Shown: in pieces, positions 6,001-22,041 of the stretch | Position numbering within the stretch: position 1 is the stretch's first letter | How the letters are laid out: every line of letters begins with the position of its first letter | Source of the DNA: Macrostomum hystrix | Lineage: Eukaryota > Animalia > Platyhelminthes | Reading direction: 5' to 3' | DNA length: 64,000 nt | Assembly: GCA_950097015.1 (NCBI GenBank) | Contig: CATNEN010000025.1 | Coordinates: 7,998,001-8,062,000 of the forward strand | The notes under the pieces: generated by a model | What the model was told of the DNA's origin: nothing | Database searches by the model: none | Seen by the model: the letters and a program-made list of their open reading frames with translations, nothing else | Made by a program: the position numbers and the translations under genes

Positions 6001-9000
6001 CGGACCGCCCTTCAACTCCGCTGAATTTCGTAACTTCCTCACCGAATATGGAGTTCATCACCGGCTTATCTGTCCACTGCACCCGGAGTCCAACGGAGCC
6101 ACCGAACGTGTCAACCGCAGCATCGGCAAGGTGATCAAGACGGCGATTGCTGAGGGCCGGAACTGGAGAGAGGCTCTAGACGACTGGCTACTGGCATTCC
6201 GCACCACGCCACACAGAGCCACAGGACGCACCCCGGCCGAGCTACTCATGGGCAGGGCGATCAACGACGGAATCCCGGCTAGTCGGCAGCCAACTGTGAC
6301 TGGATTCGACCATCAAGCCGTGAGGGACTGGAGTCGGCAGTACACGCGCGAAATGAAGCGAGCCTTTGACAAGCGCAACACCGCCAAGGAGCACAGAGTA
6401 GTTCCCGGGACAATGGTTCTCCGAAAGCAGCAGGCACGCATCAAAACTCAGCTGCCATTCGAGACCCAGCCGTGGACGGTAGAAGAGGTTCGAGGCGACA
6501 CCTGCATCCTACGACGAGGCCAACAGTCCTGCATGCGACACGTGACTCAGCTCCGACCAATGTTTCCACCTGCCAGCCCGCCTGCCGGCCCGCCTGCCGG
6601 CCCGCCTGCCAGCCCGCCTGCCGGCCCGCCTGCCAGCCCGCCTGCCGGCCCGCCTGCCGGCCCGCCTGCCGGCCCGCCTGCCGGCCCGCCTGCCGGCCCG
6701 CCTGCCGGCCCGCCTGCCGGCCCGCCTGCCGGCCCGCCTGCCGGCCCGCCTGCCGGCCCGCCTGCCGGCCCGCCTGCCGGCCCGCCTGCCGGCCCGCCTG
6801 CCGGCCCGCCTGCCGGCCCGCCTGCCGGCCCGCCTGCCGGCCCGCCTGCCGGCCCGCCTGCCGGCCCGCCTGCCGGCCCGCCTGCCGGCCCGCCTGCCGG
6901 CCCGCCTGCCGGCCCGCCTGCCGGCCCGCCTGCCGGCCCGCCTGCCGGCCCGCCTTCGCCTGCCGGCCCGCCTCCGCCTGTCGGCCAGGATACGGGTCAG
7001 GAAAATGATGCCGTGGCACTGAGACGCCATCCTAGAGCTGCCCGTGACAAGCCTAAGCGGTACAAGTAACTAAGGAATTGCGCTCTAAAGATCCATTAAG
7101 TTTCTATTATCTGAACTGTTAATCTCATGTTCAAAGTTTAGTTTTTTCAATTTCGTTTTATTCCTTTGGGGGGGAGAAGTGTAGGCGGCGCCAGCCGTCA
7201 CGCGTGCGTGGGGTTGGCGGCGTTCTGCGCTCTTTCTCTCTGCCACCTTTCTACCCCCCTTGGCACGCACGTTAACTGATGTACGGGGTGCGGCTTTAGC
7301 CGCCACCCCAGCACAACTCGGCTGTTATAAAATATACTGAATCGCATTGAAATCGCTCTTATGACATTTCGGCTATCGACTACAAACAGTCGCATTTCTC
7401 AGTTCCTACAGTAGAGTGGAGGGGAGAGAAGGTAGAGTGGAGGGGAGAGAAGGTAGAGTGGAGGGGAGAGAAGGTAGAGTGGAGGGGAGAGAAGGTAGAG
7501 TGGAGGGGAGAGAAGGTAGAGTGGAGGGGAGAGAAGGTAGAGTGCAGGGGAGAGAAAGTGTGGTGGGGAGAGAAGGTCGAGAGGAGGGGGGAGATAAGGT
7601 AGAGTGGAGGGGAGAGACATAAGGGAGGAAGGAGAGAGTGCGGAAAGCAGGGAGAGAGGAAGGAGTAAAGGGGTGAATTCAAGAAAATATCACTAATAAA
7701 AACTGGCAGTTGATTCAGAGGCACGCACCGCGTTAGCACCTGCGGCGGTGTATTGCTGGCGATCCTCTGCCAGACGTCCAGAAAGTTCTGACATTCCTGA
7801 TACGGAATGCTATTAGTGACCATCTCCACAATGAGAATGCCGAAAGCGAAGATGTCCACCTTCTCGTCGTATCTCTCCTGCAGCATCTCGGGCGCCATGT
7901 AGCCCAGGGTGCCCAGCATGGTCTTGCGGGTCTGGGTCTTGGCCGTGGCCAGGCCGAAGTCGCCCAGCTTGATGTTGTAGTATTCGTCCGGATTCTCTCC
8001 GTCGGCTATGAACACGTTCTCCGGCTTCAGGTCGCGGTGAATCACCGGCGGATTCATCCTGGGATTATTTGTTTTTGAAGATTATTAATGAGTAAAATGA
8101 GGTACAGGAAAAATTATAAAAGTAAATTCAATGTAAATACATAGGGATACTCTTTTGAAAAAAAAACCTTAAAACAACTAGAAAATTCTTAAAAGGAGAT
8201 TTTAAAGAGAAATCCTAAATAAAATTCTCGCTAGAGGAAATCCACTTAAGGGAAATAAATAAAGAGAAATCCCACAAGGGGAAATCCCACAAGGGGAAAT
8301 CCCACAAGGGGAAATCCCACAAGGGGAAATCCCACAAGGAGAAATCCCACAAGGGGAAATCCCACAAGGGGAAATCCCACAAGGGGAAATCCCACAAGGG
8401 GAAATTCCAAAAAGAAAAAAAATATAATCCAGCTCGAAAAGACGTGGAAACTCGACTGCTTAGCACTCGATTAGACAGGGCTGCTTACTTATGATGCATG
8501 TGCCGCAGGCCCTCTAAGATTTGCTGCATCCACGACTGGAACACATTGAAGTCGACAACGGCCTCTCTAGTCTGCTCATTGTAAAAGGTCTTCATTTTTT
8601 CTCGCAGCGTGCCCTCGCTCATGAACTCGGTGACAATGACGGTGGCCTTCACTTTTTCGCCTTTCTCTCCGTTCTCGTCCAATTCGAAGTAGCAGTCGAG
8701 CAGGTCATAGTAGCGCACAATGTTCGGGTGCTCGCATTTGATCATCATTTCAACCTGCAGTTTTCAGGATTGAAAGCTAGGATTTTGATTCGTGGCTGGG
8801 ATAGTTACTGATATACTACATCAGTAAGTCAGATATGTTGGGATTGAGTCACGGAATGGCAAAATGAGTCAAGAAATGAGTTATTGGGTTAGTGAGTCGA
8901 AAACATTTTAAATGGGTCAAGAATGAGTCATCAAGTAGATGAGTTATTGGGTTATTGAGTCAGTACATTTTAAATGGGTCAAGAATGAGTCATCAAGTAG

Positions 9001-12000
9001 ATGAGTTATTGGGTTATTGAGTCGAAAACATTTTAAATGGGTCAAGAATGAGTCATCAAGTAGATGAGTTATTGGGTTATTGAGTCAGTACATTTTAAAT
9101 GGGTCAAGAATGAGTCATCAAGTAGATGAGTTATTGGGTTATTGAGTCAGTACATTTTAAATGGGTCAAGAATGAGTCATCAAGTAGATGAGTTATTGGG
9201 TTATTGAGTCAGTACATTTTAAATGGGTCAAGAATGAGTCATCAAGTAGATGAGTTATTGGGTTATTGAGTCAGTACATTTTAAATGGGTCAAGAATGGG
9301 TCATCAAGTAGATGAGTTATTGGGTTATTGAGTCAGTACATTTTAAATGGGTCAAGAATGAGTCATCAAGTAGATGAGTTATTGGGTTATTGAGTCAGTA
9401 CATTTTAAATGGGTCAAGAATGAGTCATGAAGTAGATGAGTTATTGGGTTATTGAGTCAGTACATTTTAAATGGGTCAAGAATGGGTCATCAAGTAGATG
9501 AGTTATTGGGTTATTGAGTCAGTACATTTTAAATGGGTCAAGAATGGGTCATCAAGTAGATGAGTTATTGGGTCATTGTGTCAAAAACTCTTCAAATGGG
9601 TCAAGAATGAGTCATCAAGTAGATGAGTTATTGGGTTATTGTGGGTCAAGAATGGGTCATTAAGTAGATGAGTTATTGGGTTATTGAGTCAGTACATTTT
9701 AAGTGGGTCAAGAATGGGTCATTAAGTGGATAATTTACTGGGTCACTAAAATTTTCCGCTATATCCGATGAAACAACTTTCTGAATCACAAAACATCGAC
9801 ATCGTCGAGATATTCAACGATTCTCGTCGGGGTAAACAACGAATATAGGCATATTTTTCTGCTCTAAAAATTTCCTAATGTAACCATGTCGGCTATTATA
9901 TTGCATTGGATATATTTGTCACCAGACCAGGGTCTTCGACAAGAACCGCTGGGCTTTGAAAGTGAGTTAGTTCATCGTAAAGGGGGAAAAATCGGATCCA
10001 TTTGGTTAGCTTTCACGAAAAAACGGTCACTCGGTTTGGGGCCTACTGCTCAAACAAGATTTTACTCACCTCTTTTCGAACTTGCTCCTTCTCGGCCGGC
10101 CGATCCTTGCCCACCTGAAATTTCAGCTCGCACCAGGCGATGGGCCGACCCTGTTCCCGGTCGTAGCCTCGATAGACTCGCTTGTAGGCGCCTTCGCCGC
10201 ATTTGATATTGTGCTTGATCCAACGGCCGCACGGACTGACGGCGATGCCGCGCTGTTTGAGCTGCAGCTCCATCTGGTGCCGGCGCCACATCTGCTCCTC
10301 TCGCTTCCTCTCCCGCTCTTTGGCTTTCTCTTCGCGAGACTTCACCGCCTTTTTCTCTCGCTCCTTGTCAACGGCGCCGGCTGGCATTGAAGAGGCGGCG
10401 GCGGACGATGACCCGGAAGCAGTAGAATGTGTCGGCAATGAGCCTGGAGCGATGTTCGAAGCCACGGCGGAAGCCGGAACGGAGGCGGTGACATATCCAG
10501 CGGCTATAGTCGCTGATGCCATTGTCGACGAAGCGGTCTCAATGACGATGACTGCGGATCCGCCAGCCGCCAAGGCGGGTCTCGACGGATCCGTCTCTTC
10601 TAAAATAGCTTCGTCAATTATGCCGGAGGCGGCAGCAGCCGCGGCGGCTGCGAAGGTCTTGACTGCTGGCGTCGGCGGCGGTGGCTTCGGCATGGCGACG
10701 GATGCCGGCCTGGATAAACACTCTGATTCATCAGCCTCCAGGTACTGTGCTTGTTGCTGCTGCTGCTTTTCATCATATTGATTCTCATGTTGATCAGCTG
10801 GCTGCTGCTGCTGCTGCTGCTGCTGCTGTGACAACTCGCCTTCAGATCTGTCTATGTTTGTCTCGCTAACAACGCGGCGTCTTCTGCAAGAATAAATATT
10901 TCACTTAATAATCAGTTTAAAGCATAAAACTAGAAGCTTCAAGAAATGGCATTGTCAAGAAATGACACTAGATTTCAAGAAGTAACACTCGATTTCAATA
11001 ATGGCACCAGATATAAGGAAATGGCGCCAGATATTAGGAAATGGCACCAGATATTAGGAAATGGCACCAGATATTAGGAAATGGCGCCAGATATTAGGAA
11101 ATGGCACCAGATATTAGGAAATGGCGCCAGATATTAGGAAATGGCGCCAGATATTAGGAAATGGCGCCAGATATTAGGAAATGGCACCAGATAAGGAAAT
11201 GGCGCCAGATATTAGGAAATGGCGCCATGTATTAGGAAATGGCACCAGATATTAGGAAATGGCACCAGATATTAGGAAATGCCACCAGATATTAGGAAAT
11301 GGCACCAGATATTAGGAAATGGCACCAGATATTAGGAAATGGCCCAGATATTAGGAAATGGCACCAGATATTAGGAAATGGCGCCAGATATTAGGAAATG
11401 GCACCAGATATTAGGAAATGGCACCAGATATTAGGAAATGGCACCAGATATTAGGAAATGGCCCAGATATTAGGAAATGGCACCAGATATTAGGAAATGG
11501 CACCAGATATTAGGAAATGGCACCAGATATTAGGAAATGGCCCAGATATTAGGAAATGGCACCAGATATTAGGAAATGGCGCCAGATATTAGGAAATGGC
11601 ACCAGATATTAGGAAATGGCACCAGATATTAGGAAATGGCGCCATGTATTAGGAAATGGCACCAGATATTAGGAAATGGCACCAGATATTAGGAAATGGC
11701 GCCAGATGTTAGGAAATGGCGCCATGTATTAGGAAATGGCACCAGATATTAGGAAATGGCGCCAGATATTAGGAAATGGCGCCATGTATTAGGAAATGGC
11801 ACCAGATATTAGGAAATGGCACCAGATATTAGGAAATGGCACCAGATATTAGGAAATGGCGCCATGTATTAGGAAATGGCGCCAGATATTAGGAAATGGC
11901 ACCAGATATTAGGAAATGGCACCAGATATTAGGAAATGGCACCAGATATTAGGAAATGGCGCCAGATATTAGGAAATGGCGCCAGATATTAGGAAATGGC

Positions 12001-12875
12001 ACCAGATATTAGGAAATGCCACCAGATATTAGGAAATGGCACCAGATATTAGGAAATGGCACCAGATATTAGGAAATGGCGCCAGATATTAGGAAATGGC
12101 GCCATGTATTAGGAAATGGCACCAGATATTAGGAAATGGCACCAGATATTAGGAAATGGCACCAGATATTAGGAAATGGCACCAGATATTAGGAAATGGC
12201 ACCAGATATTAGGAAATGGCCCAGATATTAGGAAATGGCGCCAGATATTAGGAAATGGCACCAGATATTAGGAAATGGCACCAGATATTAGGAAATGGCA
12301 CCAACAATAAAAATGACACCGCAGTTTTATAAAACAAACACAACAGAGCCCGCTCACTCTTTGGCAGCAGCAATTCCTACAGCCAATCTCTGCTGGAGGC
12401 CGCCGCTGCCGCTGCCGCCGACGCCGCCGCTGCCTCCGTCGACGCTCTCACCAGACGAAGCCAGCGGTTCAACTTGGCTGAGCACAGTCTCACGAAAGGG
12501 CACCCGGGCCAGCCTGCGTGGCCTAGACACGCCATGCTTGCCTTGGCCTTTGTGAGGCGGCCCGAGCGGACTCAGGCTGCTGCTGTTGTTGACAATGTCG
12601 TCGTCGGTTTTGGAATGCCTACGCCGCGTTGTCGGGCCGCCTTCGCCTAAAGACTCCAAAGATCTGGCGTAGCACAGGTGAACTTCACGTTCGGCTGAGT
12701 TCTGCTCGCCATTGTCCGCGGACTCGCCGGCGGACACCCTCAGCCTGATTGGCTCGTCTGTTGAAGTGTCCGCTGGCGACAGCTGCGGCTGCGGCGCGCT
12801 GCGACTGCACTGGCCGTCATCCTGGACAGGCTGGGTCACGTGACCCCGGTCTGTCCGCAGATCAGCGGCTGAAGA
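1..12875 (-). CDS. WNK-like Ser/Thr kinase, multi-exon, 3' end beyond window start
   Basis: Phase-consistent GT-AG exons: 12875-12358, 10883-10070, 8754-8489, 8058-7729, 2215-2020 (or 2092), 1490-1137, 530-<1. Motifs: SPCGRWIK..GEGAYKRVY (Lys in Gly-loop) and IAWCELK (Cys in place of the subdomain II Lys), which are WNK hallmarks; also HPNIVRYY, HRDLKPEN, DFG, YMAPEM. The post-kinase FRLVV..GFEFQL segment resembles the WNK autoinhibitory domain. Confidence 0.85.
555..960. repeat. 30-bp minisatellite (ATTATGGTATGTTCTGATTGGCTAGTATAG)
   Basis: About 13 tandem units, decaying to about 1070; WNK intron. Confidence 0.9.
1568..1925. repeat. About 26-bp composite minisatellite (CTTCTGATTGGTTGGCAGCTAAATCT variants)
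   Basis: Repeated CTGATTGGTTGG cores; WNK intron. Confidence 0.85.
2270..2463. repeat. Purine-rich 21-bp minisatellite, left half (split by the LTR element)
   Basis: GGTAGAGTGGAGGGGAGAGAA-like units that continue at 7411. Confidence 0.8.
2464..2694 (+). repeat. 5' LTR
   Basis: TG...CA termini with 6-bp inverted ends; TATAAAA-like motif near 2610; matches 7180-7410. Confidence 0.96.
2729..7069 (+). CDS. Gag-Pol polyprotein (Gag, two zinc knuckles, PR, RT, RNase H, integrase), 1446 aa from the first ATG downstream of the LTR
   Basis: Uninterrupted ORF. Knuckles CYRCGERGHASC and CHNCGKPNHLAKAC; protease DSGAS; RT ELDIRKAFYQ and VHDD; RNase H VDAS/EREALA/TDHRPL; integrase HTGH..CIYC, DFYG, TDNGPPF, ESNGATE. 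PR-RT-RH-IN order is Ty3/Gypsy. Confidence 0.96.
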   Translation: MATSYVSLPPPEPFLITHDPHNAGKRWNEWSARFADFIEASGIANENQKCKLLCYTAGKEVSDIIRELPKPRSDADGQEQEHTLQTIFKGLKQHFDDRKNIVYARYQFRLCVQQSGEKIEAWYSRLRTAAEPCEFGDLRNSLIRDQLVATCTSDKLRRRLLQEANISLEDALRKARAFEAAEEQAAEMEKTTESQVASVANRSQTASDKRRPHSEARQSQSQTCYRCGERGHASCDAAKDKICHNCGKPNHLAKACRQPRLSSNRVKQQIHANAYSTAPGDTASQDVFTLHREGIYPPDVSLKVQVGDQQLSMMIDSGASCSIMSKCTFKTLSRPHLRAPKSEVRAYGCASPLKILGVSDLQVHVGSASTVIPFYVMDGDGLTILGREPAFRLGVLKIQRLDSSGTEAVHSNSTASLSPQLQDILHRHREVFEGIGCIKGVQVKVQLSGDAVPVCHAPSRVAAHLRATVVDELKELERQDIIEAVKGPSAWVARMVVVPKADGGVRICQDLRDLNAFVVPEKQQIPTLDEVTEEMSGAKLFSELDIRKAFYQIPVHEDSRHLFTFSTPLGLMRLKRLSMGFTNASEILQRVMLGILSGIDGVRWVHDDVIVYAADIKQHHERLNVCLQRLGEFGITLNKDKCKFAKPAVDFLGMHLSAKGIQPAAEKIQAMQDFRQPANVSEIRSFLGTANFLAKFISGYADVSAPLRQLTKKGQPWDWTASHTKAFNSIKSAIANADTLAFFDRKRHTELLVDASPIGLGAILTQKQPDGSSRPVAYASRALSPVEQRYAQIEREALAIKFACLKFEHYLAGDPNFTVVTDHRPLVPLFKPGSRPPPRIERMALRIQHLRFTLLYRPGPANPADLLSRQPLPESRPNIGEVLDEAHVNAVSTGAVPKGFTIQQIREAARTDAEMQAALGAIRTGNWNTLSPVQRSFKSISSELTENDGVLLRGDLIVIPEALRRPILQLAHTGHLGADRTLKRLQTKVWWPKMYSDCEVFVKCCIYCQAAATHVHQTPLKPTEMPDGPWQLLGMDFYGPVQGHMLLVTTDLYSKYPEVDVMQSTTAGSVTQHLRRLFSRHGIPAEVITDNGPPFNSAEFRNFLTEYGVHHRLICPLHPESNGATERVNRSIGKVIKTAIAEGRNWREALDDWLLAFRTTPHRATGRTPAELLMGRAINDGIPASRQPTVTGFDHQAVRDWSRQYTREMKRAFDKRNTAKEHRVVPGTMVLRKQQARIKTQLPFETQPWTVEEVRGDTCILRRGQQSCMRHVTQLRPMFPPASPPAGPPAGPPASPPAGPPASPPAGPPAGPPAGPPAGPPAGPPAGPPAGPPAGPPAGPPAGPPAGPPAGPPAGPPAGPPAGPPAGPPAGPPAGPPAGPPAGPPAGPPAGPPAGPPAGPPAGPPAGPPSPAGPPPPVGQDTGQENDAVALRRHPRAARDKPKRYK
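6566..6980 (+). repeat. 12-bp tandem repeat CCCGCCTGCCGG inside the pol ORF, encoding (PPAG)n
   Basis: About 33-34 near-identical in-frame units after the integrase C-terminus. Confidence 0.95.
7180..7410 (+). repeat. 3' LTR
   Basis: Same sequence as 2464-2694; preceded by the purine tract GGGGGGGAGAAG. Confidence 0.96.
7411..7625. repeat. Purine-rich 21-bp minisatellite, right half
   Basis: Period 21 (7441, 7462, ...). Confidence 0.88.
8262..8408. repeat. 15-bp minisatellite (AAGGGGAAATCCCAC)
   Basis: About 9 units. Confidence 0.9.
8875..9730. repeat. 62/63-bp minisatellite
   Basis: Unit GAGTTATTGGGTTATTGAGTCAGTACATTTTAAATGGGTCAAGAATGAGTCATCAAGTAGAT, about 13 copies. Confidence 0.92.
11000..12303. 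repeat. 20-bp minisatellite (CCAGATATTAGGAAATGGCA/CG)
   Basis: About 65 units. Confidence 0.95.
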
Positions 12876-12999
12876 CTGAAAATTGCGTTTTTTAAACGGA
12901 TTATAAGGTCACAAGTTAGAATCTTGGCGCAGAAGGAAACAGCTTCTAAAGTAATTAATTGAGCAAAACACTTAATTCAATTTGAGTATTGGTATAGGT

Positions 13000-13078
13000 G
13001 CATTAGCTAGGGTAAAAGTGGATCTCGCGGCCTCCCCAGTCCATGGACTGAACAGCTGAACACCGCCTTTAGAAGGAG
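13000..13078 (+). mobile_element. SINE fragment
   Basis: GCATTAGCTAGGG...CCCCAGTCCATGGACTGAACAGCTG matches the SINE 3' half. Confidence 0.7.
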
Positions 13079-13084
13079 TAAAAG

Positions 13085-13622
13085 GAGGTGTGAATGGCAG
13101 TTGGAAACACCGGTGGAAGGAGGTAAGATTGGCAGTTGGAAACACCGGTGGAAGGAGGTAAGATTGGCAATTGGAAACACCGGTGGAATGAGGTGAGAAT
13201 GGCAGTTGGAAACACCGGTGGAATGAGGTGAGAATGGCAGTTGGAAACACCGGTGGAATGAGGTGAGAATGGCAGTTGGAAACACCGGTGGAAGGAGGTG
13301 AGATTGGCAGTTGGAAACACCGGTGAAAGGAGGTAAGAATGGCAGTTGGAAGCACCGGTGGAAGGAGGTAAGAATGGCAGTTGGAAACCCCGGATGGAAG
13401 GAGGTAAGAATGGCAGTTGGAAACACCGGTGGAAGGAGGTAAGAATGGCAGTTGGAAACACCGGTGGAAGGAGGTAAGAATGGCAGTTGGAAGCACCGGT
13501 GGAAGGAGGTGAAAATGGCAGTTGGAAACACCGGTGGAAGGAGGTGAAAATGGCACTTGGAAGCACCGGTGGAAGGAGGTGAAAATGGCAGTTGGAAACA
13601 CCGGTGGAAGGAGGTAAGAATG
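13085..13622. repeat. 35-bp minisatellite between ATP6V1H and WNK
   Basis: GGCAGTTGGAAACACCGGTGGAAGGAGGTAAGAAT, about 15 units. Confidence 0.92.
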
Positions 13623-14385
13623 GTATGTTGAAATACCTTAAAAATGAATAATTGTAATAAAACTAATTCTAAACTACATCAACAAATTACTTAATCACCA
13701 AAGTCACTCTTAAATGGTTTATAAATAGCAATAAAATGCACACAGAGGTTCGACAAAGAGTTGAAAAAGAACTTTTTAAACTACAAGTGTATAATTTTTC
13801 ATAGTTATTTTTTGTATTATGCTGCGTGGAAAGTAAAAGAAAACAACAAAACATGGTTTGAGAGAGAGAGTGGACTTAATATCAATTTACTCGAGCTAAT
13901 ATAAAGAGACAACAATGAAAAAATAGGACAATGTGCTGATCTACATGAAAATAAAAATGAGAGGATTAACAATTGATTATGAGAATCTGCTAAAGGTCGA
14001 GGCATAGAAGTATCTCGAACTGTGCTAAAATACAAATCACTTAAAAAAACAAGTGGAACTAAAACGCATGCGGTGTAGGAATAAAAAGGAACACTATGAG
14101 TTGATAGTTTACGTTAATAAAAACCAGCTGAATATTGTATATATTATGCGAATAAAATATATAAAGGAAAATGTAGTAGGAGCGTAGTAAACGCAAAAAA
14201 ATAATTTTTGTTACAGGCATCAACCCAACAAAAACTATTCTAAACCTAACTAATAGCATTATAATAATAAAGTTGATATTAACAATAACAAATACACTAA
14301 AACTCAACTAAACAGAACTAATACTTTAATCAAAGAGTTATCTACTGCAATAGTTCAAATTTCAAGTTTCTGTTAGCAAATATAG

Positions 14386-17300
14386 TTATGATTTGACAGC
14401 CTGCTGGTTCTGCGACTTGCTGCCACCACCGCCGCCCTCCGTTTTGGCCTTGTCTTCAATCTGCTTGCCGAGATACTCCCTGCGTTTGATAGATTAGATG
14501 ATCACTCACAGGTGGGAATGCCATAGATAGATTATCACTCACAGGTGGGAATGCCATAGATAGATTATCACTCACAGGTGGGAATGCCATAGATAGATGA
14601 TCACTCACAGTTGGGAATGTCATAGATAGGTGATCACTCACAGGTGAGAATGCCATAGATAGATGATCACTCACAGGTGGGAATGCCATAGATTGACGAT
14701 CACTCACAGGTGGGAATGCCATATATTGACCAATGACTAAATAGTAAATCTAATATATAGTATCTTATCTAATCAAAGTACCTAGAACCCAAGTATCTTG
14801 TCTAATCAAGGTACCTAGAACCCAAGTATCTTATCTAATCAAAGTACCTAGAACCCAAGTATCTTATCTAATCAAAGTACCTAGAACCCAAGTATCTTAT
14901 CTAATCAAGGTACCTAGAACCCAAGTATCTTATCTAATCAAGGTACCTAGAACCCAAGTATCTTATCTAATCAAGGTACCTAGAACTCAAGTATCTATAA
15001 TCCAAGCATTTATAATTCAGTATCTATTATCTGGTAGTTTGTATCCAGTAGTCCGTAAATTAAATGTCCAAGAAATGAGAAAATATTCGCAGCTCACCAG
15101 TTGTGAACCATAATTTTTTGTACGGCAATGAGAGCATTGTAGCGAACATTAGGATCATCGCTAGTCAGCATCTTCATCACCAGCTCCTTGGCGCCTAGCT
15201 GTTCGATTATTCTGCGAAGTTTCAGATTAACTGGCTTTGTTAGCAAGCTTTTTTGAGTTTGGAAATCGAAAACCCTTCGCGATATGTTTTCCTTCTTTTG
15301 GGACCAACTGTGGGTCTTAGTCGCTGAAATCTTTCAGAAACTTCAGCAAGTCTCTGTAGCTAATTATACTTATTACTTCAGTAGTAACTTCAGTAGGTTT
15401 CAATGTATACCAGATTCATAGCAGTCAGAAAGTCTTTCTAGCTACAATATTTCTTGTATTTCAGTAGAACTTCGTAGCCATCATATTCCCAGTACTTTAG
15501 TAAGCCTTTGTAGCTACCATAATCCGGGTATATGAGCAGGTCTTTGTAGCTACCATAATATGGGTATATGAGCAGGTCTTTGTAGCTACCATAATCTGGG
15601 TATATGAGCAGGTCTTTGTAACTACCATAATCCGGGTATATGAGCAGGTCTTTGTAGCTACCATAATCCGGGTATATGAGCAGGTCTTTGTAACTACCAT
15701 AATCCGGGTATATGAGCAGGTCTTTGTAGCTACCATACTCCACGTATATGAACAGGTCTTTGTAGCTACGATGCTTCCAGGTATATAAGCAGATCTTTGT
15801 AGCTACCATACCTCAGGTATATGAGCAGGTCTTTGAAGCTACGATACTTCCAGGTATATGAGCAGGTCTTTGTTGCTACCATACTTCCAGGTATAAGCAG
15901 ATCTTTATAGCAACCATATTCTTAGTATATGAGCAGGTCTTTGCAGGCACCTTTTACCCACTATATCAGGTCTTTGTAGCTACCCGCCCGCCAAGCAGAC
16001 AGAGAGAGCGAACTCACGTTTTTCCCCTTGGATAGTGCCTGACGTACTCTCCGACATCGTGCGCGGCCACGCACAGTACCAAAGAGTCCTTGCTAGTCTC
16101 CAGCAGGCGCACCAGAATCTTCAACAGTTCATAGTTGCGCTCATTCAATCTGGTGGCATTCTCGCGCCAGAAGCGCTCTGATTTGTGCACTGGACTCCAT
16201 TCCAGCCGGCCGGCCTTCAATTCGCTGGCGTATTCGTCGAACGAGCTCAGATCCTGGATGGAGGTGCTCAGGCGCTCGAGAAGAAACTGCAGATCTTCCT
16301 CGTGTTCAGGATCGTCGTATTTCTTTTGCACTAGCAGCTCCACCTGCGATGAGCACAGGTAGAATGATTGAACAATTTGACAGCAGAAAAAAAGAAAAGA
16401 AGACATAACAATGTGTCAACAAAACAGAGCTGGGAAAGATAGAGCAACAATGAGGTGATAGAAAAACAACAGAAGAACAGAACAAGAAAAGGAGGTGACA
16501 GAAGAATAACTGACAGAAAGAACAAGGAAATAAGGTGACAGAAGAAAACCAGACAGAAAGAACAAGGAATTGATGCGACAGAAGAAAACCAGACAGAAAG
16601 AACAAGGAAATAAGGTGACAGAATAAAACCAGACAGAAAGAACAAGGAAATGAGGTGACAGAAGAAAAACTAAAAAAAATAACAAGGAAATTATGCGGCA
16701 GAAGAAAAACAGACAGAAAGAACAAGGAAATGAGGTGACAGAAGAAAAACAGACAGAAAGAACAAGGAAATAAGGTGACAGAATAAAACCAGACAGAAAG
16801 AACAAGGAAATGAGGTGACAGAAGAAAAACTAAAAAAAAGAACAAGGAAATTATGCGACAGAAGAAAACCAGACAGAAAGAACAAGGAAATAAGGCGACA
16901 GAAGAAAACCAGACAGAAAGAACAAGGAAATAAGGTGACAGAATAAAACCAGACAGAAAGAACAAGGAAATGAGGTGACAGAAGAAAAACTAAAAAAAAG
17001 AACAAGGAAATTATGCGGCAGAAGAAAAACAGACAGAAAGAACAAGGAAATGAGGTGACAGAAGAAAAACAGACAGAAAGAACAAGGAAATGAGGTGACA
17101 GAAGAAAAATAGACAGAAAGAACAAGGAAATGAGGTGACAGAAGAAAAACTAAAAAAAAGAACAAGGAAATTATGCGACAGAAGAAAACCAGACAGAAAG
17201 AACAAGGAAATAAGGCGACAGAAGAAAACCAGACAGAAAGAACAAGGAAATAAGGCGACAGAATAAAACCAGACAGAAAGAACAAGGAAATGAGGTGACA

Positions 17301-20300
17301 GAAGAAAAACTAAAAAAAATAACAAGGAAATTATGCGGCAGAAGAAAAACAGACAGAAAGAACAAGGAAATGAGGTGACAGAAGAAAAACAGACAGAAAG
17401 AACAAGGAAATAAGGTGACAGAATAAAACCAGACAGAAAGAACAAGGAAATGAGGTGACAGAAGAAAAACTAAAAAAAAGAACAAGGAAATTATGCGACA
17501 GAAGAAAACCAGACAGAAAGAACAAGGAAATAAGGCGACAGAAGAAAACCAGACAGAAAGAACAAGGAAATAAGGTGACAGAATAAAACCAGACAGAAAG
17601 AACAAGGAAATGAGGTGACAGAAGAAAAACTAAAAAAAAGAACAAGGAAATTATGCGGCAGAAGAAAAACAGACAGAAAGAACAAGGAAATGAGGTGACA
17701 GAAGAAAAACAGACAGAAAGAACAAGGAAATGAGGTGACAGAAGAAAAATAGACAGAAAGAACAAGGAAATGAGGTGACAGAAGAAAAACTAAAAAAAAG
17801 AACAAGGAAATTATGCGACAGAAGAAAACCAGACAGAAAGAACAAGGAAATAAGGCGACAGAAGAAAACCAGACAGAAAGAACAAGGAAATAAGGCGACA
17901 GAATAAAACCAGACAGAAAGAACAAGGAAATGAGGTGACAGAAGAAAAACTAAAAAAAATAACAAGGAAATTATGCGGCAGAAGAAAAACAGACAGAAAG
18001 AACAAGGAAATGAGGTGACAGAAGAAAACCAGACAGAAAGAACAAGGAAATGAGGTGACAGAAGAAAAACAGACAGAAAGAACAAGGAAATGAGGTGACA
18101 GAAGAAAAACTAAAAAAAAGAACAAGGAAATTATGCGACAGAAGAAAACCAGACAGAAAGAACAAGGAAATAAGGCGACAGAAGAAAACCAGACAGAACG
18201 AACAAGGAAATGAGGTGACAGAAGAAAACCAGACAGAAGCGAACAAGGAAATGAGGTGACAGAAGAAAACCAGAGAGAAATAACAAGAAATTGATGCGAC
18301 AGAAGAAAACCAGACAGAAAGAACAAGGAAATGAGGTGACAGAAGAAAAGCAGACAGAAAGAACAAGGAAAGGAGGTGACAGAAGAAAACCAGAGAGAAA
18401 GAACAAGGAAATGAGGTGACAGAAGAAAACCAGACAGAAAGAACAAGGAAATGAGGTGACAGAAGAAAAACAGACAGAAAGAACAAGGAAATGAGGTGAC
18501 AGAAGAAAAACAGACAGAAAGAACAAGGAAATGAGGTGACAGAAGAAAACCAGACAGAAAGAACAAGGAAATGAGGTGACAGAAGAAAAACAGACAGAAA
18601 GAACAAGGAAATGAGGTGACAGAAGAAAAACAGACAGAAAGAACAAGGAAATGAGGTGACAGAAGAAAAACTAAAAAAAATAACAAGGAAATTATGCGGC
18701 AGAAGAAAAACAGACAGAAAGAGCAAGAAATTGATGCGACAGAAGAAAAACAGACAGAAAGAACAAGGAAATGAGGTGACAGATGAAAAACAGACAGAAA
18801 GACAGGACAAGCAAACCAGGTGACAGGAAAAAAGCAGGAAGAAAGGCAGTACAATTGGTTACCTGTTTGAGCACCTTGCAGTGCACCATGGACAGGGCGC
18901 TCTCTCGCACCAGCAACGAGTCGGTCGGCTTCTCTAGCAGGTGGCGAAAGAAGGCGCAAATAATGCGATTCACCTTCTCCTTCTCCGATTCGCAGAGCAC
19001 ATCGGCGCAGATTGGGATCAGATTGAACCTGGTAAAGGGATTTTTATATAAATTAAAGCTAAACTGGCAAACTTCCCACCTCCGGTCACTAAAATAGGTC
19101 ATTAATCTGCATTGAGTCATCCTCAATGAACTAGCCACCCTCCGGTCACTAAAATAGGTCATTAATCTGCATTGAGTCATCCTCAATGAACTAGCCACCC
19201 TCCGGTCACTAAAATAGGTCATTAATCTGCATTGAGTCATCCTCAATGAACTAGCCACCCTCCGGTCACTAAAATAGGTCATTAATCTGCATTGAGTCAT
19301 CCTCAATGAACGAGCCACCCTCCGGTCACTAAAATAGGTCATTAATCTGCATTGAGTCATCCTCAATGAACGAGCCACCCTCCGGTCACTAAAATAGGTC
19401 ATTACTCGACCTTCAGTCATTCCAGTTGTTGGTCATTACCCTTCTACAATCCTGTAAATTGGTCATTTATCTCCCTTATTCTTTCTGAGTCCGTTAAAAA
19501 ACCAAATTTGCAAAATTTCGCCCTTGAAATCCCACTCTACAAGCGCACAGTTAATTTTAAACTGACTTCTTCATTCGCATTACAATGTCGGCATCGAAGC
19601 TGAGACACCAGAGGCAGAACACCAGCTGGTACTGGATCTGATAGTTTACTTTAGTAGCCAGCACGCTAGCCAGTGTGGCTATGCCGTCGATGTCACAGAA
19701 TGCCTGCCTGTACGGCCCAACGCGGAGCATCATCTGGAGGCAGCGGGCCACTGTCTGGATGTACTCGTTCGACTAGATGAGAAAACGAGGGCAACGCGTC
19801 GGGTGTTGCAGTCAAAACTATATAATAATAATAATTGATTTACACCTGTCCGAATCAGGCCAGCTAAATAAACTGGATGGGATCTAAATAAACGGGATGG
19901 GATCTAAATAAACGGGATGGGATCTAAATAAACGGGATGGGATCTAAATAAACGGAATGGGATCTAAATAAATTAGATGGGATCTAAATAAACAGTATGG
20001 GATCTAAATAAACAGGATGGGATCTAAACAAACAGGATGGGATTTAAATTAACAGGACGGGATCTAAGTTAACAGGATGGGATCTAAACAAACTGGGTGG
20101 GATCTAAATAAACAGTATGGGATCTAAATAAACAGTATAGGATCTAAATAAACAGTATGGGATCTAAATAAACAGTATGGGATCTAAATAAACAGGATGG
20201 AATCTAAACAAACAGGATGGGATCTAGAAATGGAAGGCTGGATATAATTTATTTAATCGGCTCTGGATTTATATTTCGAGTCATTAAAGAAACAGAACGA

Positions 20301-22041
20301 GAATGAAAGAATGCCAACAAGCGAATTGGTTCTCACAGGCGATCGCAGCTGCTCCCTAAGCCAGGACAGATAGTGCAGCAATTCAGCGTGTTCCATCAGC
20401 TGGCTGCCCCAGCAGGCGAATTTCGCAATGATCCTAGAAGCTTGGTTCACAATGAAACTGTCCTGCCTGTGCAGCATGGCAAAGAACGGACTCCACACGC
20501 TTTCCCTGCGTCGCTGAGAATAAGACTTGAAGATTTCTACTCTCTGCTTGTCTTCCTGAAGCAGATCGTCTAGCAGAGTGAGAATGTACTGCACAGTCTG
20601 GTCTTTGGAGATTCTAGCCAGCAGGGCCAGGATAGTACGAGCGAATTGGCCAGGATTCTCATCGATGAAAGCCTTGCGCTGCTCTGGCTGATTGGCCCGT
20701 GACTCCAGCTTGACTATGAAATCATAGTCGGCCTGGTCAATCATCTGACCTCTGGAAAATACATACTAGTCATTTGAACTTACAGTTTTCTTAGCTGCTT
20801 AAATTGATATTCACAGTAATTGGAAAACTCACTGCAAATAGGACTGCCAGTTGACTCGATTTGCACGAACTTCATTCGATTTGTGCTGTAGCAGGCTGGT
20901 GGCCGCATACATGCCTGTGAAAGTTGTTTATTTTTATGGCTAATATTTTTCAAGGATAGTTAAAGTAAACTTAGCTAAGCAGTTTATTTAAAGACAGATA
21001 GTACATCACATTAGCAATATAGAAGAAGAACAATTAAAATGGTTTATGATTATTTTTTATGAGCAACACAGCCAAATAAAATTACAAGATCAAATTTATC
21101 AATCTACTAAATTGAAGTATTTAGTACATTCTAAAAGTAATAAATAAACAAACTCTGATTTGCTACTAAATACTTCATGTGTAAGGCTAACAATACTTTT
21201 TACATCCAATAAATTAACATTTGGCAATAATAACTATTATAAACAACATATTAATAAAGAAAAAAAAGTACAATTTTTTATTAAAAATCTAACTTAATTA
21301 AAACTTATTCTGGTTTTTAAGTATGTAAAAACTAACCTAAGACAAAGAATAAGTATATAAAAGCAGTGGATTGCTATTACTATTAATATAATAGAATATA
21401 TACTAACTTCAAATCAATTGCTAACAGCTAAAATATTACAATATTACCTATATGTAGATACAAGAAAAACATTTATAATAAAATTACTGAAATAAAACTA
21501 ATTTTATATGCACAAAGGCAATTACCAATATATATACAATATAATATATATATATCAGATATACCTTTGCAAAATAAGAAAAAATAAAATACACTTTTAA
21601 TAGTTTTTTTACTGCTTTGTCATTTTAAGCAGCATATTCATAGCTATCATTGACCTAGGCACACCATAATTTTTTTTAAGAATTAGACAGATGCTTTAAT
21701 TTTAAGACACATTAGTGTTATTATCCACTAATAATAGACACTACGACCCCATTCGATCCAACTAAAGTCATCAAAAGTAATTTGAAAAGACATCACCAAA
21801 AATATTTTTATAAAATAAATTTTAAATGGTACAAAAGCAAGCAACAGTCAACTAAGCTAAACCTTGGACTTTAAATTTAAGTTAATTTTTTGTAATACAG
21901 TTATTTAAAAGAGCGGCACAAGAGAAAAAGCTGCTACTCACCGATTTTATCAATGTCTTCAATGTGACCACTACGAAAAATATTCGAAACGTTACTAGAG
22001 TAGTTGTCAGTAGCGTCTTGACTGAGCTGTGAATAAGACAT
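14386..22041 (-). CDS. ATP6V1H: V-type proton ATPase subunit H
   Basis: Exons 22041-21942, 20914-20833, 20751-20337, 19772-19567, 19028-18863, 16343-16018, 15211-15098, 14479-14386, all phases consistent. Motifs [74 protein letters not shown]. Confidence 0.95.
14490..14995. repeat. Two adjacent, unrelated 33-bp minisatellites (14490-14730 and 14760-14995)
   Basis: Units ATCACTCACAGGTGGGAATGCCATAGATAGATG and CAAGTATCTTATCTAATCAAAGTACCTAGAACC. Confidence 0.9.
15490..15985. repeat. 36-bp minisatellite
   Basis: GTATATGAGCAGGTCTTTGTAGCTACCATAATCCGG and variants. Confidence 0.9.
16420..18830. repeat. 40-bp satellite with 160-bp and 640-bp higher-order periods
   Basis: Monomer GAAGAAAACCAGACAGAAAGAACAAGGAAATGAGGTGACA. 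A variant monomer recurs every 160 bp from 16671 to 18111. Confidence 0.93.
19078..19405. repeat. 60-bp minisatellite
   Basis: About 5.4 near-identical units starting TCCGGTCACTAAAATAGGTC. Confidence 0.95.
19822..19863 (-). mobile_element. SINE 3' tail fragment
   Basis: ATAATAATAATTGATTTACACCTGTCCGAATCAGGCCAG versus ATAATAATTGATTACACCTGTCCGATTGGGCCAG at 45602. Confidence 0.65.
19865..20228. repeat. 20-bp minisatellite (GGGATCTAAATAAACAGGAT)
   Basis: About 18 units. Confidence 0.9.

What the first reader, a model, noticed from the sequence alone, without database searches (positions are those of the whole stretch)
12358..14388. ATG-less first WNK exon in frame for a spliced-leader AUG, 1.5 kb downstream of ATP6V1H (candidate operon)
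Seen: the most 5' WNK exon found starts after a strong acceptor (TTTTCAG, 12876). It reads TCT TCA GCC GCT... in the kinase frame with no in-frame Met in the whole exon. Upstream, before the ATP6V1H stop (14386, same strand), there is only a SINE fragment, a 35-bp array and AT-rich DNA, and no ATG-bearing exon was found. Known: flatworm spliced leaders end in AUG, which can serve as the initiator Met, and trans-splicing resolves polycistronic transcripts. Inference: SL addition at 12875 gives MSSAADLRT..., so translation of this kinase would depend on trans-splicing.
Basis: partly seen in the sequence, partly recalled or inferred. Interest (0 to 1): 0.75.

Follow-up and report, generated by a model that had tools for sequence, protein, structure and literature searches.

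The report
WNK kinase start codon from spliced leader
In the flatworm Macrostomum hystrix a WNK-type kinase gene has no start codon in its first coding exon and most likely takes it from the AUG that ends the trans-spliced leader, a flatworm habit known since 2006, so the case is well supported but ordinary.

Summary
On the minus strand, a GC-rich exon (12875-12358) opens right after GCAATTTTCAG. It has an in-frame TGA 34 nt upstream and no in-frame ATG in 172 codons. It joins in phase to the WNK kinase exon at 10883.

The genome is Macrostomum hystrix. It carries at least 23 exact copies of the 35-nt Macrostomum spliced leader, which ends in ATG followed by GTAAG.

The exon is real coding sequence. 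The M. lignano orthologue keeps the frame, all length differences are multiples of 3, and dN/dS is about 0.44. A 5'-partial M. lignano CDS spans the same exon 1/exon 2 junction. One M. lignano copy has CAG at the same spot. The other has ATG there, which predicts the same Met-Ser-Ser start.

The 1510-nt spacer has no GT[AG]AG donor, so a cis-spliced upstream exon is unlikely. I found no M. hystrix RNA for this gene, so the trans-splice junction is inferred, not seen.

The operon with ATP6V1H is only possible. The raw gap is 1.5 kb, or roughly 0.8-0.9 kb once repeats are subtracted.

The scan has already reported this mechanism for many other genes on other DNA of this genome (LTV1, TOP3A, NF-YB, TAF10 and others).

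The parts
14386..14479 (-). Last coding exon of ATP6V1H (..[15 protein letters not shown], stop TAA at 14388-14386)
   Evidence: Read directly. V-ATPase_H_C and V-ATPase_H_N Pfam matches on the exons upstream, at window 15097-20759. 79% identical to the last V1H exon of M. lignano.
14325..14330 (-). ATTAAA, a poly(A)-signal-like hexamer 56 nt after the ATP6V1H stop
   Evidence: Pattern scan. Function is inferred only.
12876..14385 (-). Spacer of 1510 nt, either a candidate outron or an intercistronic region. It is AT-rich and has no GT[AG]AG donor on the gene strand.
   Evidence: zero GT[AG]AG sites. Only 17 ATG...GT combinations exist, all with weak donors in AT-rich DNA.
13082..13623 (.). 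Tandem array with a 35-bp unit, 15.5 copies
   Evidence: TRF.
13000..13075 (.).
   Evidence: Dozens of matches at 77-97% identity elsewhere in the genome. ARAGORN finds no tRNA-like fold.
12909..12911 (-). In-frame TGA upstream of the exon. It closes the frame before the acceptor.
12876..12886 (-). Candidate trans-splice acceptor GCAATTTTCAG (AG at 12877-12876). It is the only conserved island in the upstream region.
   Evidence: Fits the M. lignano trans-splice motif [T/C]TNCAG (PMC8629364). GCAATTT..AG|TCTTCA aligns with M. lignano.
12358..12875 (-). First coding exon of the WNK-like kinase: 518 nt, 172 codons plus 2 nt, with no ATG in frame
   Evidence: Orthologous exons in M. lignano are 440 and 434 nt, in the same phase. 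Conserved blocks include EVHLCYARS.ESLG, SSLSPLG.P.KG, RVP.RETVLSQ and GLQQRL.VGI.
12869..12870 (-). Second AG, 7 nt downstream (TCTTCAG). Using it would put the SL AUG out of frame, with a stop after 11 codons.
   Evidence: Read directly. It is absent in M. lignano, which has TCTTCAATT.
12352..12357 (-). Donor GTGAGC of exon 1
   Evidence: Matches the donor motif GT[G/A]AG.
10884..12357 (-). Intron 1, mostly a 20-bp tandem array (11000-12303, 65 copies)
10070..10883 (-). Exon 2: a low-complexity N-terminal region, then the start of the kinase domain carrying the WNK signature (GEGAYKRVY ... IAWCELKF)
   Evidence: The M. lignano protein P0188 reads ..ISAASE|RRRVLSE.. across the same junction.
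7680..8748 (-). Kinase-domain exons (about 8485-8748 and 7680-8057)
   Evidence: Pfam Pkinase. The best solved structures are WNK1 and WNK3 at E about 1e-27, against about 1e-14 for the next kinases.

Best explanation
This is the 5' end of one of three WNK-type kinase genes of Macrostomum hystrix. Its first coding exon (12875-12358) begins directly at a 3' splice acceptor and has no start codon.

The pre-mRNA is most likely trans-spliced at AG 12877-12876 to the 35-nt Macrostomum spliced leader. The last three bases of that leader are AUG. This places AUG directly before UCU UCA, so the protein starts Met-Ser-Ser-Ala-Ala-Asp... and runs in one frame through exon 1 into the kinase exons.

Shown here: the anatomy, the SL genes, conservation of the exon as coding sequence, and the exon 1/exon 2 junction in the sister species. 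Inferred: the trans-splice junction in M. hystrix and use of the SL AUG by the ribosome.

Whether the outron is the tail of an ATP6V1H-WNK polycistron or comes from a promoter in the spacer stays open. I put the operon at about one in three.
For: 1. Species and SL. The 35-nt SL published for M. lignano (PMC8629364) occurs 23 times exactly, in arrays of about 11.6-kb period. In the one copy I read (L005) it is followed by GTAAG, a hairpin and an Sm-like AUAUUUUUAG.

2. Acceptor. TTTCAG fits the trans-splice motif [T/C]TNCAG. It is the only AG between the upstream in-frame stop and the exon.

3. Coding exon. It has zero stops in 172 codons, against 5 and 8 in the other frames, and a chance of about 0.008. 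Against M. lignano, exon lengths are 518, 440 and 434 nt, all phase 2. dN/dS is 0.44 at dS about 1.1, and several blocks are conserved. These blocks lie upstream of any genomic in-frame ATG in M. hystrix.

4. Transcript-based model. The M. lignano protein P0188 (BOX15_Mlig013440g2, flagged partial) spans exon 1 into exon 2 at the homologous junction. Its CDS is open at the 5' end and starts 15 nt after the orthologous CAG, with no upstream exon.

5. Same spot in M. lignano. Copy L026 has GCAATTTGCAG|TCTTCA. Copy L025 is otherwise identical for the 35 nt before the site and the 120 nt after it, but has GCAATTTGATG TCTTCA. So an ATG sits exactly where the acceptor is and gives the same Met-Ser-Ser.

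6. Paralogue C. It encodes ATG TCG TCA (Met-Ser-Ser) 3 nt after an acceptor.

7. No cis donor. No GT[AG]AG occurs in the 1510-nt spacer.

8. Precedent. Flatworm SLs end in AUG, and more than 40 S. mansoni cDNAs need it to initiate (Cheng et al. 2006, as cited in PMC9851317 and PMC12582326).
Against: - I could not retrieve any M. hystrix RNA read or transcript contig for this gene.
- A second AG 7 nt downstream (12870-12869) also fits the motif. If used, it would put the SL AUG out of frame.
- The M. lignano partial CDS starts 15 nt inside the exon, not at the acceptor, so it does not fix the 5' end exactly.
- M. lignano has its own in-frame ATG at codon 19 of exon 1, so SL dependence there is not obligatory.
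- The ATG in copy L025 may be a polishing artefact rather than a genomic start codon.
- The SL AUG context (U at -3, U at +4) is not a strong Kozak context.
Confidence: 0.8

Rival explanations
1. ATP6V1H and the WNK gene form an operon. One promoter upstream of ATP6V1H makes a polycistronic precursor, and SL trans-splicing at 12876 releases the WNK mRNA. This is an addition to the best explanation, not an alternative to the SL AUG.
For: - Both genes are on the same strand.
- The acceptor has no upstream consensus donor.
- Raw distance is 1510 nt. Counting from the ATTAAA (about 1450 nt) and subtracting the 542-bp array and the 76-bp repeat fragment leaves about 0.8 kb (about 0.9 kb from the stop). 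That is under the 1-kb repeat-adjusted threshold used for M. lignano.
- Adjacency and spacing are kept in both M. lignano copies. I measured it in L026 at 1578 nt with two arrays; a fused gene model, P0034, also exists.
- About 40% of SL genes in M. lignano are assigned to operons.
Against: - The operon mode in M. lignano is about 100 bp, and this gap sits near the cut-off.
- The spacer sequence is not conserved between species.
- In the paralogous segment on contig C1, a TOP1 gene lies between the ATP6V1H and WNK copies. The linkage therefore reflects a segmental duplication, not necessarily co-transcription.
- Another follow-up in this genome rejected a similar dicistron idea (s1-286158; not checked by me).
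- No RNA spanning the gap was available.
Confidence: 0.35
2. Exon 1 is not translated in M. hystrix. The start codon was lost and translation begins at the first genomic in-frame AUG in exon 2 (the Met in ..SVAMPKPPPP.., about 10690), which would make exon 1 a long 5' UTR.
For: That Met is conserved in M. lignano (..SVAMPPPPPAV..). One NCBI model, P0155, even starts further downstream at MWRRHQ.
Against: - Exon 1 stays open for 172 codons at dS of about 1.1 from M. lignano, all indels are in threes, and blocks are conserved.
- If the SL is added, its AUG is the first AUG, lies in frame, and has no stop before exon 2.
- P0155 is a truncated model. The full frame is intact in its own locus.
Confidence: 0.07
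3. A cis-spliced upstream exon, in the spacer or further upstream, supplies an ATG and joins the acceptor at 12876.
For: The acceptor could serve cis-splicing. Flatworm acceptors are often shared between cis- and trans-splicing (PMC12582326). Seventeen ATG...GT combinations in phase 0 exist in the spacer.
Against: - None of them has a GT[AG]AG donor, and all lie in AT-rich DNA with no coding character.
- The N-terminal region is about the same length in all three paralogues (about 160-172 codons before the phase-2 donor), which leaves no room for a missing exon.
- The M. lignano transcript-based model has no upstream exon.
Confidence: 0.05
4. The mRNA is not trans-spliced here, or is spliced at the second AG, and exon 1 is translated from a near-cognate codon (CUG at 12860-12858 or GUG at 12839-12837).
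For: Both codons are in frame. The second AG also fits the acceptor motif.
Against: Non-AUG initiation is rare and weak. The conserved Ser-Ser codons right after the acceptor, and the ATG or CAG at that exact spot in M. lignano, point to initiation there.
Confidence: 0.03

Closest known systems
SL-donated initiator AUG in flatworms (Cheng, Cohen, Ndegwa and Davis 2006, J Biol Chem 281:733; 'slORFs' of PMC9851317)
   Same: The SL ends in AUG. The recipient exon starts at a 3' acceptor in phase 0 and has no AUG of its own. In a relative, a Met sits at the same position.
   Different: Here the recipient is a WNK-type kinase in a free-living macrostomid. The junction is inferred from DNA and from the sister species, not from cDNA of this species.
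SL trans-splicing and operons in Macrostomum lignano (Wudarski et al. 2017, PMC5730564; Ustyantsev and Berezikov 2021, PMC8629364) and in M. hystrix (Wiberg et al. 2023, PMC10468722)
   Same: The 35-nt SL is identical. The acceptor motif [T/C]TNCAG is met. The intergenic spacer is padded with repeats, as described for Macrostomum operons.
   Different: The gap is about 15 times the typical 100-bp operon spacing and passes the 1-kb rule only after repeats are subtracted.
Other genes of this same genome already reported by this scan (LTV1, TOP3A, NF-YB, TAF10, POLR3K, TIM21, ADCK1, OTUD6B, RINT1, CEP170)
   Same: The same mechanism, SL and species.
   Different: Those follow-ups report transcript contigs showing the junction. 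For this long gene I could not retrieve any. New here is the comparison with paralogues and with two M. lignano copies (CAG versus ATG).

Membership tests
Gene with an SL-donated start codon (flatworm slORF) | The species has an SL RNA whose exon ends in AUG, followed by a GU donor | tested here: met
   There are 23 exact copies of the 35-nt SL. The one copy read (L005) is followed by GTAAG, a hairpin and an Sm-like site.
Gene with an SL-donated start codon (flatworm slORF) | The first exon begins at a 3' acceptor with no matching cis donor upstream | tested here: met
   The acceptor is TTTTCAG|TCT and fits the published motif. No GT[AG]AG occurs in the 1510-nt spacer.
Gene with an SL-donated start codon (flatworm slORF) | The SL AUG is in frame with a conserved ORF that has no AUG of its own before the conserved residues | tested here: met
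Gene with an SL-donated start codon (flatworm slORF) | RNA reads or cDNA with the SL joined to this acceptor | not testable with these tools
   No M. hystrix transcript could be retrieved. Only indirect support exists from the M. lignano 5'-partial CDS and from the ATG at the site in copy L025.
Gene with an SL-donated start codon (flatworm slORF) | Translation starts at the SL AUG (N-terminal peptide or ribosome footprints) | not testable with these tools
   No such data are available.
SL-resolved operon (polycistronic unit) | Same-strand neighbours, with the downstream gene starting at a trans-splice acceptor and a repeat-adjusted gap under 1 kb (the PMC8629364 criterion) | tested here: inconclusive
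   Both genes share a strand. The raw gap is 1510 nt, or about 0.8-0.9 kb after subtracting the 35-bp array and the repeat fragment. This sits near the cut-off, and trans-splicing itself is only inferred.
SL-resolved operon (polycistronic unit) | Precursor RNA spanning both genes, and no promoter between them | not testable with these tools
   No RNA or TSS data are available.
WNK (with-no-lysine) kinase | Protein kinase domain | tested here: met
   Pfam Pkinase on two exons.
WNK (with-no-lysine) kinase | The beta3 Lys is replaced (Cys in AWCEL) and the catalytic Lys sits in the glycine loop (GxGxxK) | tested here: met
   Exon 2 reads GEGAYKRVY ... IAWCELKF. This was read directly against my own knowledge of the WNK motif.
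WNK (with-no-lysine) kinase | The closest characterised relatives are WNKs | tested here: met
   PDB: WNK1 and WNK3 at about 1e-27, the next kinases at about 1e-14. Non-flatworm relatives of the paralogue's M. lignano orthologue (P0004) are named WNK3 or WNK4.
WNK (with-no-lysine) kinase | Autoinhibitory / PF2-like domain after the kinase (PF12202) | tested here: inconclusive
   No Pfam hit on the conserved C-terminal exon 1032-1475. The flatworm proteins also lack PF12202.
V-ATPase subunit H (ATP6V1H) | V-ATPase_H_N and V-ATPase_H_C domains in order on one strand | tested here: met

The most novel reading that the evidence does not exclude
The trans-splice acceptor and a genomic start codon are interchangeable at one nucleotide position. 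In M. lignano, two near-identical copies of this gene differ only by CAG (acceptor) versus ATG (start codon) directly before TCT TCA, and M. hystrix has CAG. If the ATG is real, one copy has 'hard-wired' the SL-donated Met into the genome and lost the acceptor. That would be a snapshot of how genes enter or leave SL dependence. If it is not real, it is an SL footprint written into the Mlig_3_7 assembly by RNA-seq polishing, which could affect other trans-spliced genes in that reference.
Probability: 0.35. Interest if true: 0.5.

Novelty: new member of a known kind. Interest (0 to 1): 0.3.

Why it matters
For annotation, gene finders that demand an ATG will truncate this kinase by about 230 residues or fuse it to ATP6V1H. 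Both errors occur in the public M. lignano models (P0155 starts in exon 2; P0034 is a V1H-WNK fusion). For biology, this adds a signalling kinase to the list of flatworm genes whose translation depends on trans-splicing. The CAG/ATG pair in M. lignano also offers a simple test of how such dependence is gained or lost. The mechanism itself has been known since 2006 and is common in this genome.

Tried and rejected
1. Word search with the exon 1 translation found no hit in the 95-301 aa band, and Pfam found nothing. The N-terminal region is fast-evolving and low in complexity.

2. Exon 2 in the word search and in the full HMMER library returned only M. lignano models and distant WNKs. No transcript-derived protein of M. 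hystrix appeared.

3. BLASTP of exon 1 against the paralogue's orthologue P0004 was not significant (E = 1.2). I accepted homology of the N-terminal exons only after finding the shared PHK...R.RK.V.I/F.ETVL motif at the same relative place in all three paralogues, each before the same phase-2 GA|GTGAG donor.

4. I looked for a second example of an ATG 'footprint' at paralogue B in M. lignano. Both copies read GTAATG|TTGCAG, with a 5'-partial CDS starting right after the ATG. Because both copies agree and the species differ anyway, this does not separate a real ATG from an artefact, so I dropped it as support.

5. The 5' end of ATP6V1H in L025 could not serve as another test because that model is truncated.

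6. ARAGORN found no tRNA-like fold in the 'SINE fragment'.

7. Conserved V1H-WNK linkage is not evidence for an operon. The paralogous segment has TOP1 between the two genes.

8. I made no joined exon 1 + exon 2 sequence and searched with none. The junction rests on phase arithmetic and on the M. lignano protein P0188.
Full report
**What is in the sequence**

All features are on the minus strand.

- The last ATP6V1H exon ends with TAA at 14388-14386. The upstream exons carry the V-ATPase_H_N and _C domains.
- A 1510-nt AT-rich spacer follows. It contains ATTAAA at 14330, a 35-bp tandem array at 13082-13623, and a fragment of a dispersed repeat at about 13000-13075 with dozens of other copies in the genome.
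- At 12886-12876 the sequence reads GCAATTTTCAG. Base composition then switches sharply to about 64% GC.
- From 12875 the frame TCT TCA GCC GCT ... stays open for 172 codons up to a GTGAGC donor at 12357.
- That frame has no ATG. An in-frame TGA lies at 12911-12909. The other two frames have 5 and 8 stops. The chance of the open frame is about 0.008.
- The 518 nt leave two bases (GA). Exon 2 starts at 10883 after CTTGCAG with an A, and continues in the frame that carries GEGAYKRVY...IAWCELKF.

I built no joined exon 1 + exon 2 sequence and searched with none. The junction rests on phase arithmetic and on the M. lignano protein described below.

**Which gene and which organism**

- The kinase exons match Pfam Pkinase.
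- Their best solved relatives are WNK1 and WNK3, at about 1e-27 against about 1e-14 for other kinases.
- The Cys in AWCEL and the Lys in the glycine loop are the WNK hallmark (my own knowledge of the family).
- The genome has 220,453,370 bases in 42 contigs. These are exactly the figures for Macrostomum hystrix in Table 1 of PMC10468722.
- The 35-nt SL published for M. lignano (PMC8629364) occurs 23 times without mismatch, mostly in arrays of about 11.6-kb period. In the copy I read it is followed by GTAAG, a hairpin and an Sm-like site.

So the 'no AUG-terminated SL' route to refutation is closed.

**Is exon 1 really coding, and is it the first exon?**

It is single-copy in the genome and has no Pfam match or word-search hit.

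The decisive evidence came from M. lignano. Two copies of the orthologous locus were fetched: L025 and L026, both with ATP6V1H directly upstream.

- Their exon 1 is 440 and 434 nt, against 518 nt here. All three are in phase 2, so every length difference is a multiple of three.
- dN/dS against M. hystrix is 0.44 at dS of about 1.1.
- Several blocks are conserved: EVHLCYARS.ESLG, SSLSPLG.P.KG, RVP.RETVLSQ and GLQQRL.VGI.
- The NCBI protein P0188 comes from the transcript-guided Mlig_3_7 annotation (PMC5730564). It reads ..ISAASE|RRRVLSE.. across the homologous exon 1/exon 2 junction.
- P0188 is flagged 5'-partial, and its CDS starts 15 nt after the orthologous acceptor, with no upstream exon.

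In M. hystrix all the conserved blocks lie upstream of any genomic in-frame ATG. They can be translated only if initiation occurs at or near the exon's 5' end.

**The acceptor**

- TTTCAG fits the trans-splice motif [T/C]TNCAG reported for M. lignano.
- It is the only AG between the upstream stop and the exon.
- The spacer has not one GT[AG]AG donor on this strand.
- The string GCAATTT.(CAG)TCTTCA is the only conserved island in an otherwise unalignable upstream region.

Copy L026 of M. lignano has CAG|TCTTCA at the same place. Copy L025 is identical to L026 for the 35 nt before the site and the 120 nt after it, but has ATG TCTTCA there.

An ATG sitting exactly on the acceptor position predicts the same N-terminus, Met-Ser-Ser, that SL addition would give.

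Paralogue C in M. hystrix also starts ATG TCG TCA, 3 nt after an acceptor. Paralogue B has CAG|TCTTCA followed 13 nt later by its own ATG.

**Caveat on the M. lignano ATG**

Mlig_3_7 was polished with Pilon using RNA-seq as well as DNA reads (PMC5730564). SL-bearing reads that overhang the junction by three bases carry ATG. The CA-to-AT difference could therefore be an RNA footprint rather than a genomic start codon.

- If it is a footprint, it is indirect RNA evidence that the SL is joined exactly there in M. lignano.
- If it is real, one copy has converted the acceptor into a start codon.

Either reading supports AUG-UCU-UCA in the mRNA. I could not tell them apart. A look at paralogue B was uninformative.

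**Weak points**

- I found no M. hystrix RNA for this gene. The length filter of the word search, and then its cap, prevented the transcript-contig check that earlier follow-ups made on shorter genes.
- A second AG 7 nt downstream (TCTTCAG, 12870-12869) also fits the motif. It would put the SL AUG out of frame, with a stop after 11 codons. It is absent in M. lignano, and the usual preference for the first AG favours 12876, but only reads can settle the ratio.
- The SL AUG context is not strong.

**Operon**

The gap is 1510 nt.

- Counted from the ATTAAA, and with the 35-bp array and the repeat fragment subtracted, it is about 0.8 kb (about 0.9 kb counted from the stop). That is under the 1-kb repeat-adjusted threshold of PMC8629364, but far from the roughly 100-bp mode.
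- The arrangement and spacing are kept in M. lignano: 1578 nt measured in L026, padded by different arrays.
- The spacer sequence itself is not conserved.
- In the paralogous segment on contig C1, a TOP1 gene lies between the ATP6V1H and WNK copies. The linkage is therefore inherited from a segmental duplication and does not argue for co-transcription.

I put the operon at about 0.35. It is neither needed for nor excluded by the SL-AUG reading.

**Comparison with what is known, and verdict**

All reported flatworm SLs end in AUG. Cheng et al. (2006) showed that it serves as initiator, with more than 40 S. mansoni cDNAs depending on it (as cited in PMC12582326 and PMC9851317).

This scan has already reported the same mechanism for many genes on other DNA of this genome: LTV1, TOP3A, NF-YB, TAF10, POLR3K, TIM21, ADCK1, OTUD6B, RINT1 and CEP170. 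I did not check those notes.

This case is therefore a new member of a known kind. It is well supported by comparative evidence (confidence 0.8) and not yet seen in RNA. Its practical value is for annotation: public M. lignano models either truncate this kinase (P0155) or fuse it to ATP6V1H (P0034). The only mildly novel element is the CAG/ATG alternation at one position between two M. lignano copies.

Noticed in passing
L025:8087-8089 versus L026:5983-5985 (M. lignano NIVC01001283.1 and NIVC01002377.1): Two near-identical copies of the orthologous gene differ by ATG versus CAG exactly at the trans-splice acceptor. Either a genomic start codon has replaced the acceptor, or RNA-seq-based Pilon polishing wrote an SL footprint into Mlig_3_7.
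   Followed up: partly
G000:C25:4582022-4582519 (L023) and L027/L029 around the CDS start: Paralogue B also has CAG|TCTTCA, followed by its own ATG. The ATG is 13 nt after the acceptor in M. hystrix, so an SL AUG would be out of frame and open a roughly 60-codon overlapping uORF. It is 12 nt after in M. lignano, which is in frame and would give MSSCKMAHG.
   Followed up: partly
G000:C1:23411790-23438002 (L020, L024, L019, L021): A paralogous segment carries ATP6V1H, TOP1 and WNK copies, all on one strand. The first WNK-C coding exon is split by an intron filled with a 24-bp tandem array, at a place where the window's exon 1 is continuous.
   Followed up: partly
window 11000-12303 and 13082-13623; L026 5549-5936 and 6465-6797: In both species the spacer before exon 1 and intron 1 are filled with tandem arrays, but the unit sequences and periods differ: 35 and 20 bp in M. 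hystrix, 32 and 12 bp in M. lignano. This points to independent satellite growth at orthologous non-coding positions.
   Followed up: no
window 2300-7310, plus strand: An intact-looking Gypsy/Ty3-type retrotransposon ORF (1474 aa, 2645-7069) with a long C-terminal PAGP repeat sits inside a WNK intron. It is flanked by duplicated stretches (2312-2590 and 7085-7306) that look like LTRs.
   Followed up: no
window 20910-20916, minus strand: The ATP6V1H start ATG (20912-20910) lies 2 nt after an acceptor (AG at 20916-20915) that follows AT-rich DNA. ATP6V1H is probably SL trans-spliced too, with the SL AUG out of frame.
   Followed up: no
G000:C15, C17 and C42 (for example L005:1495-1535): The SL RNA genes sit in tandem arrays with a period of about 11.6 kb. 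Many further SL-like copies with 1-3 mismatches are scattered through the genome, some ending in ATA and some in arrays of about 927-bp period on C39.
   Followed up: no
P0034 and P0155 (M. lignano public models): P0034 is a frameshifted fusion of ATP6V1H and WNK. P0155 starts at an internal Met in exon 2, although the full frame is intact in its locus. Both errors are what an ATG-less, SL-dependent first exon would be expected to cause in automatic annotation.
   Followed up: partly
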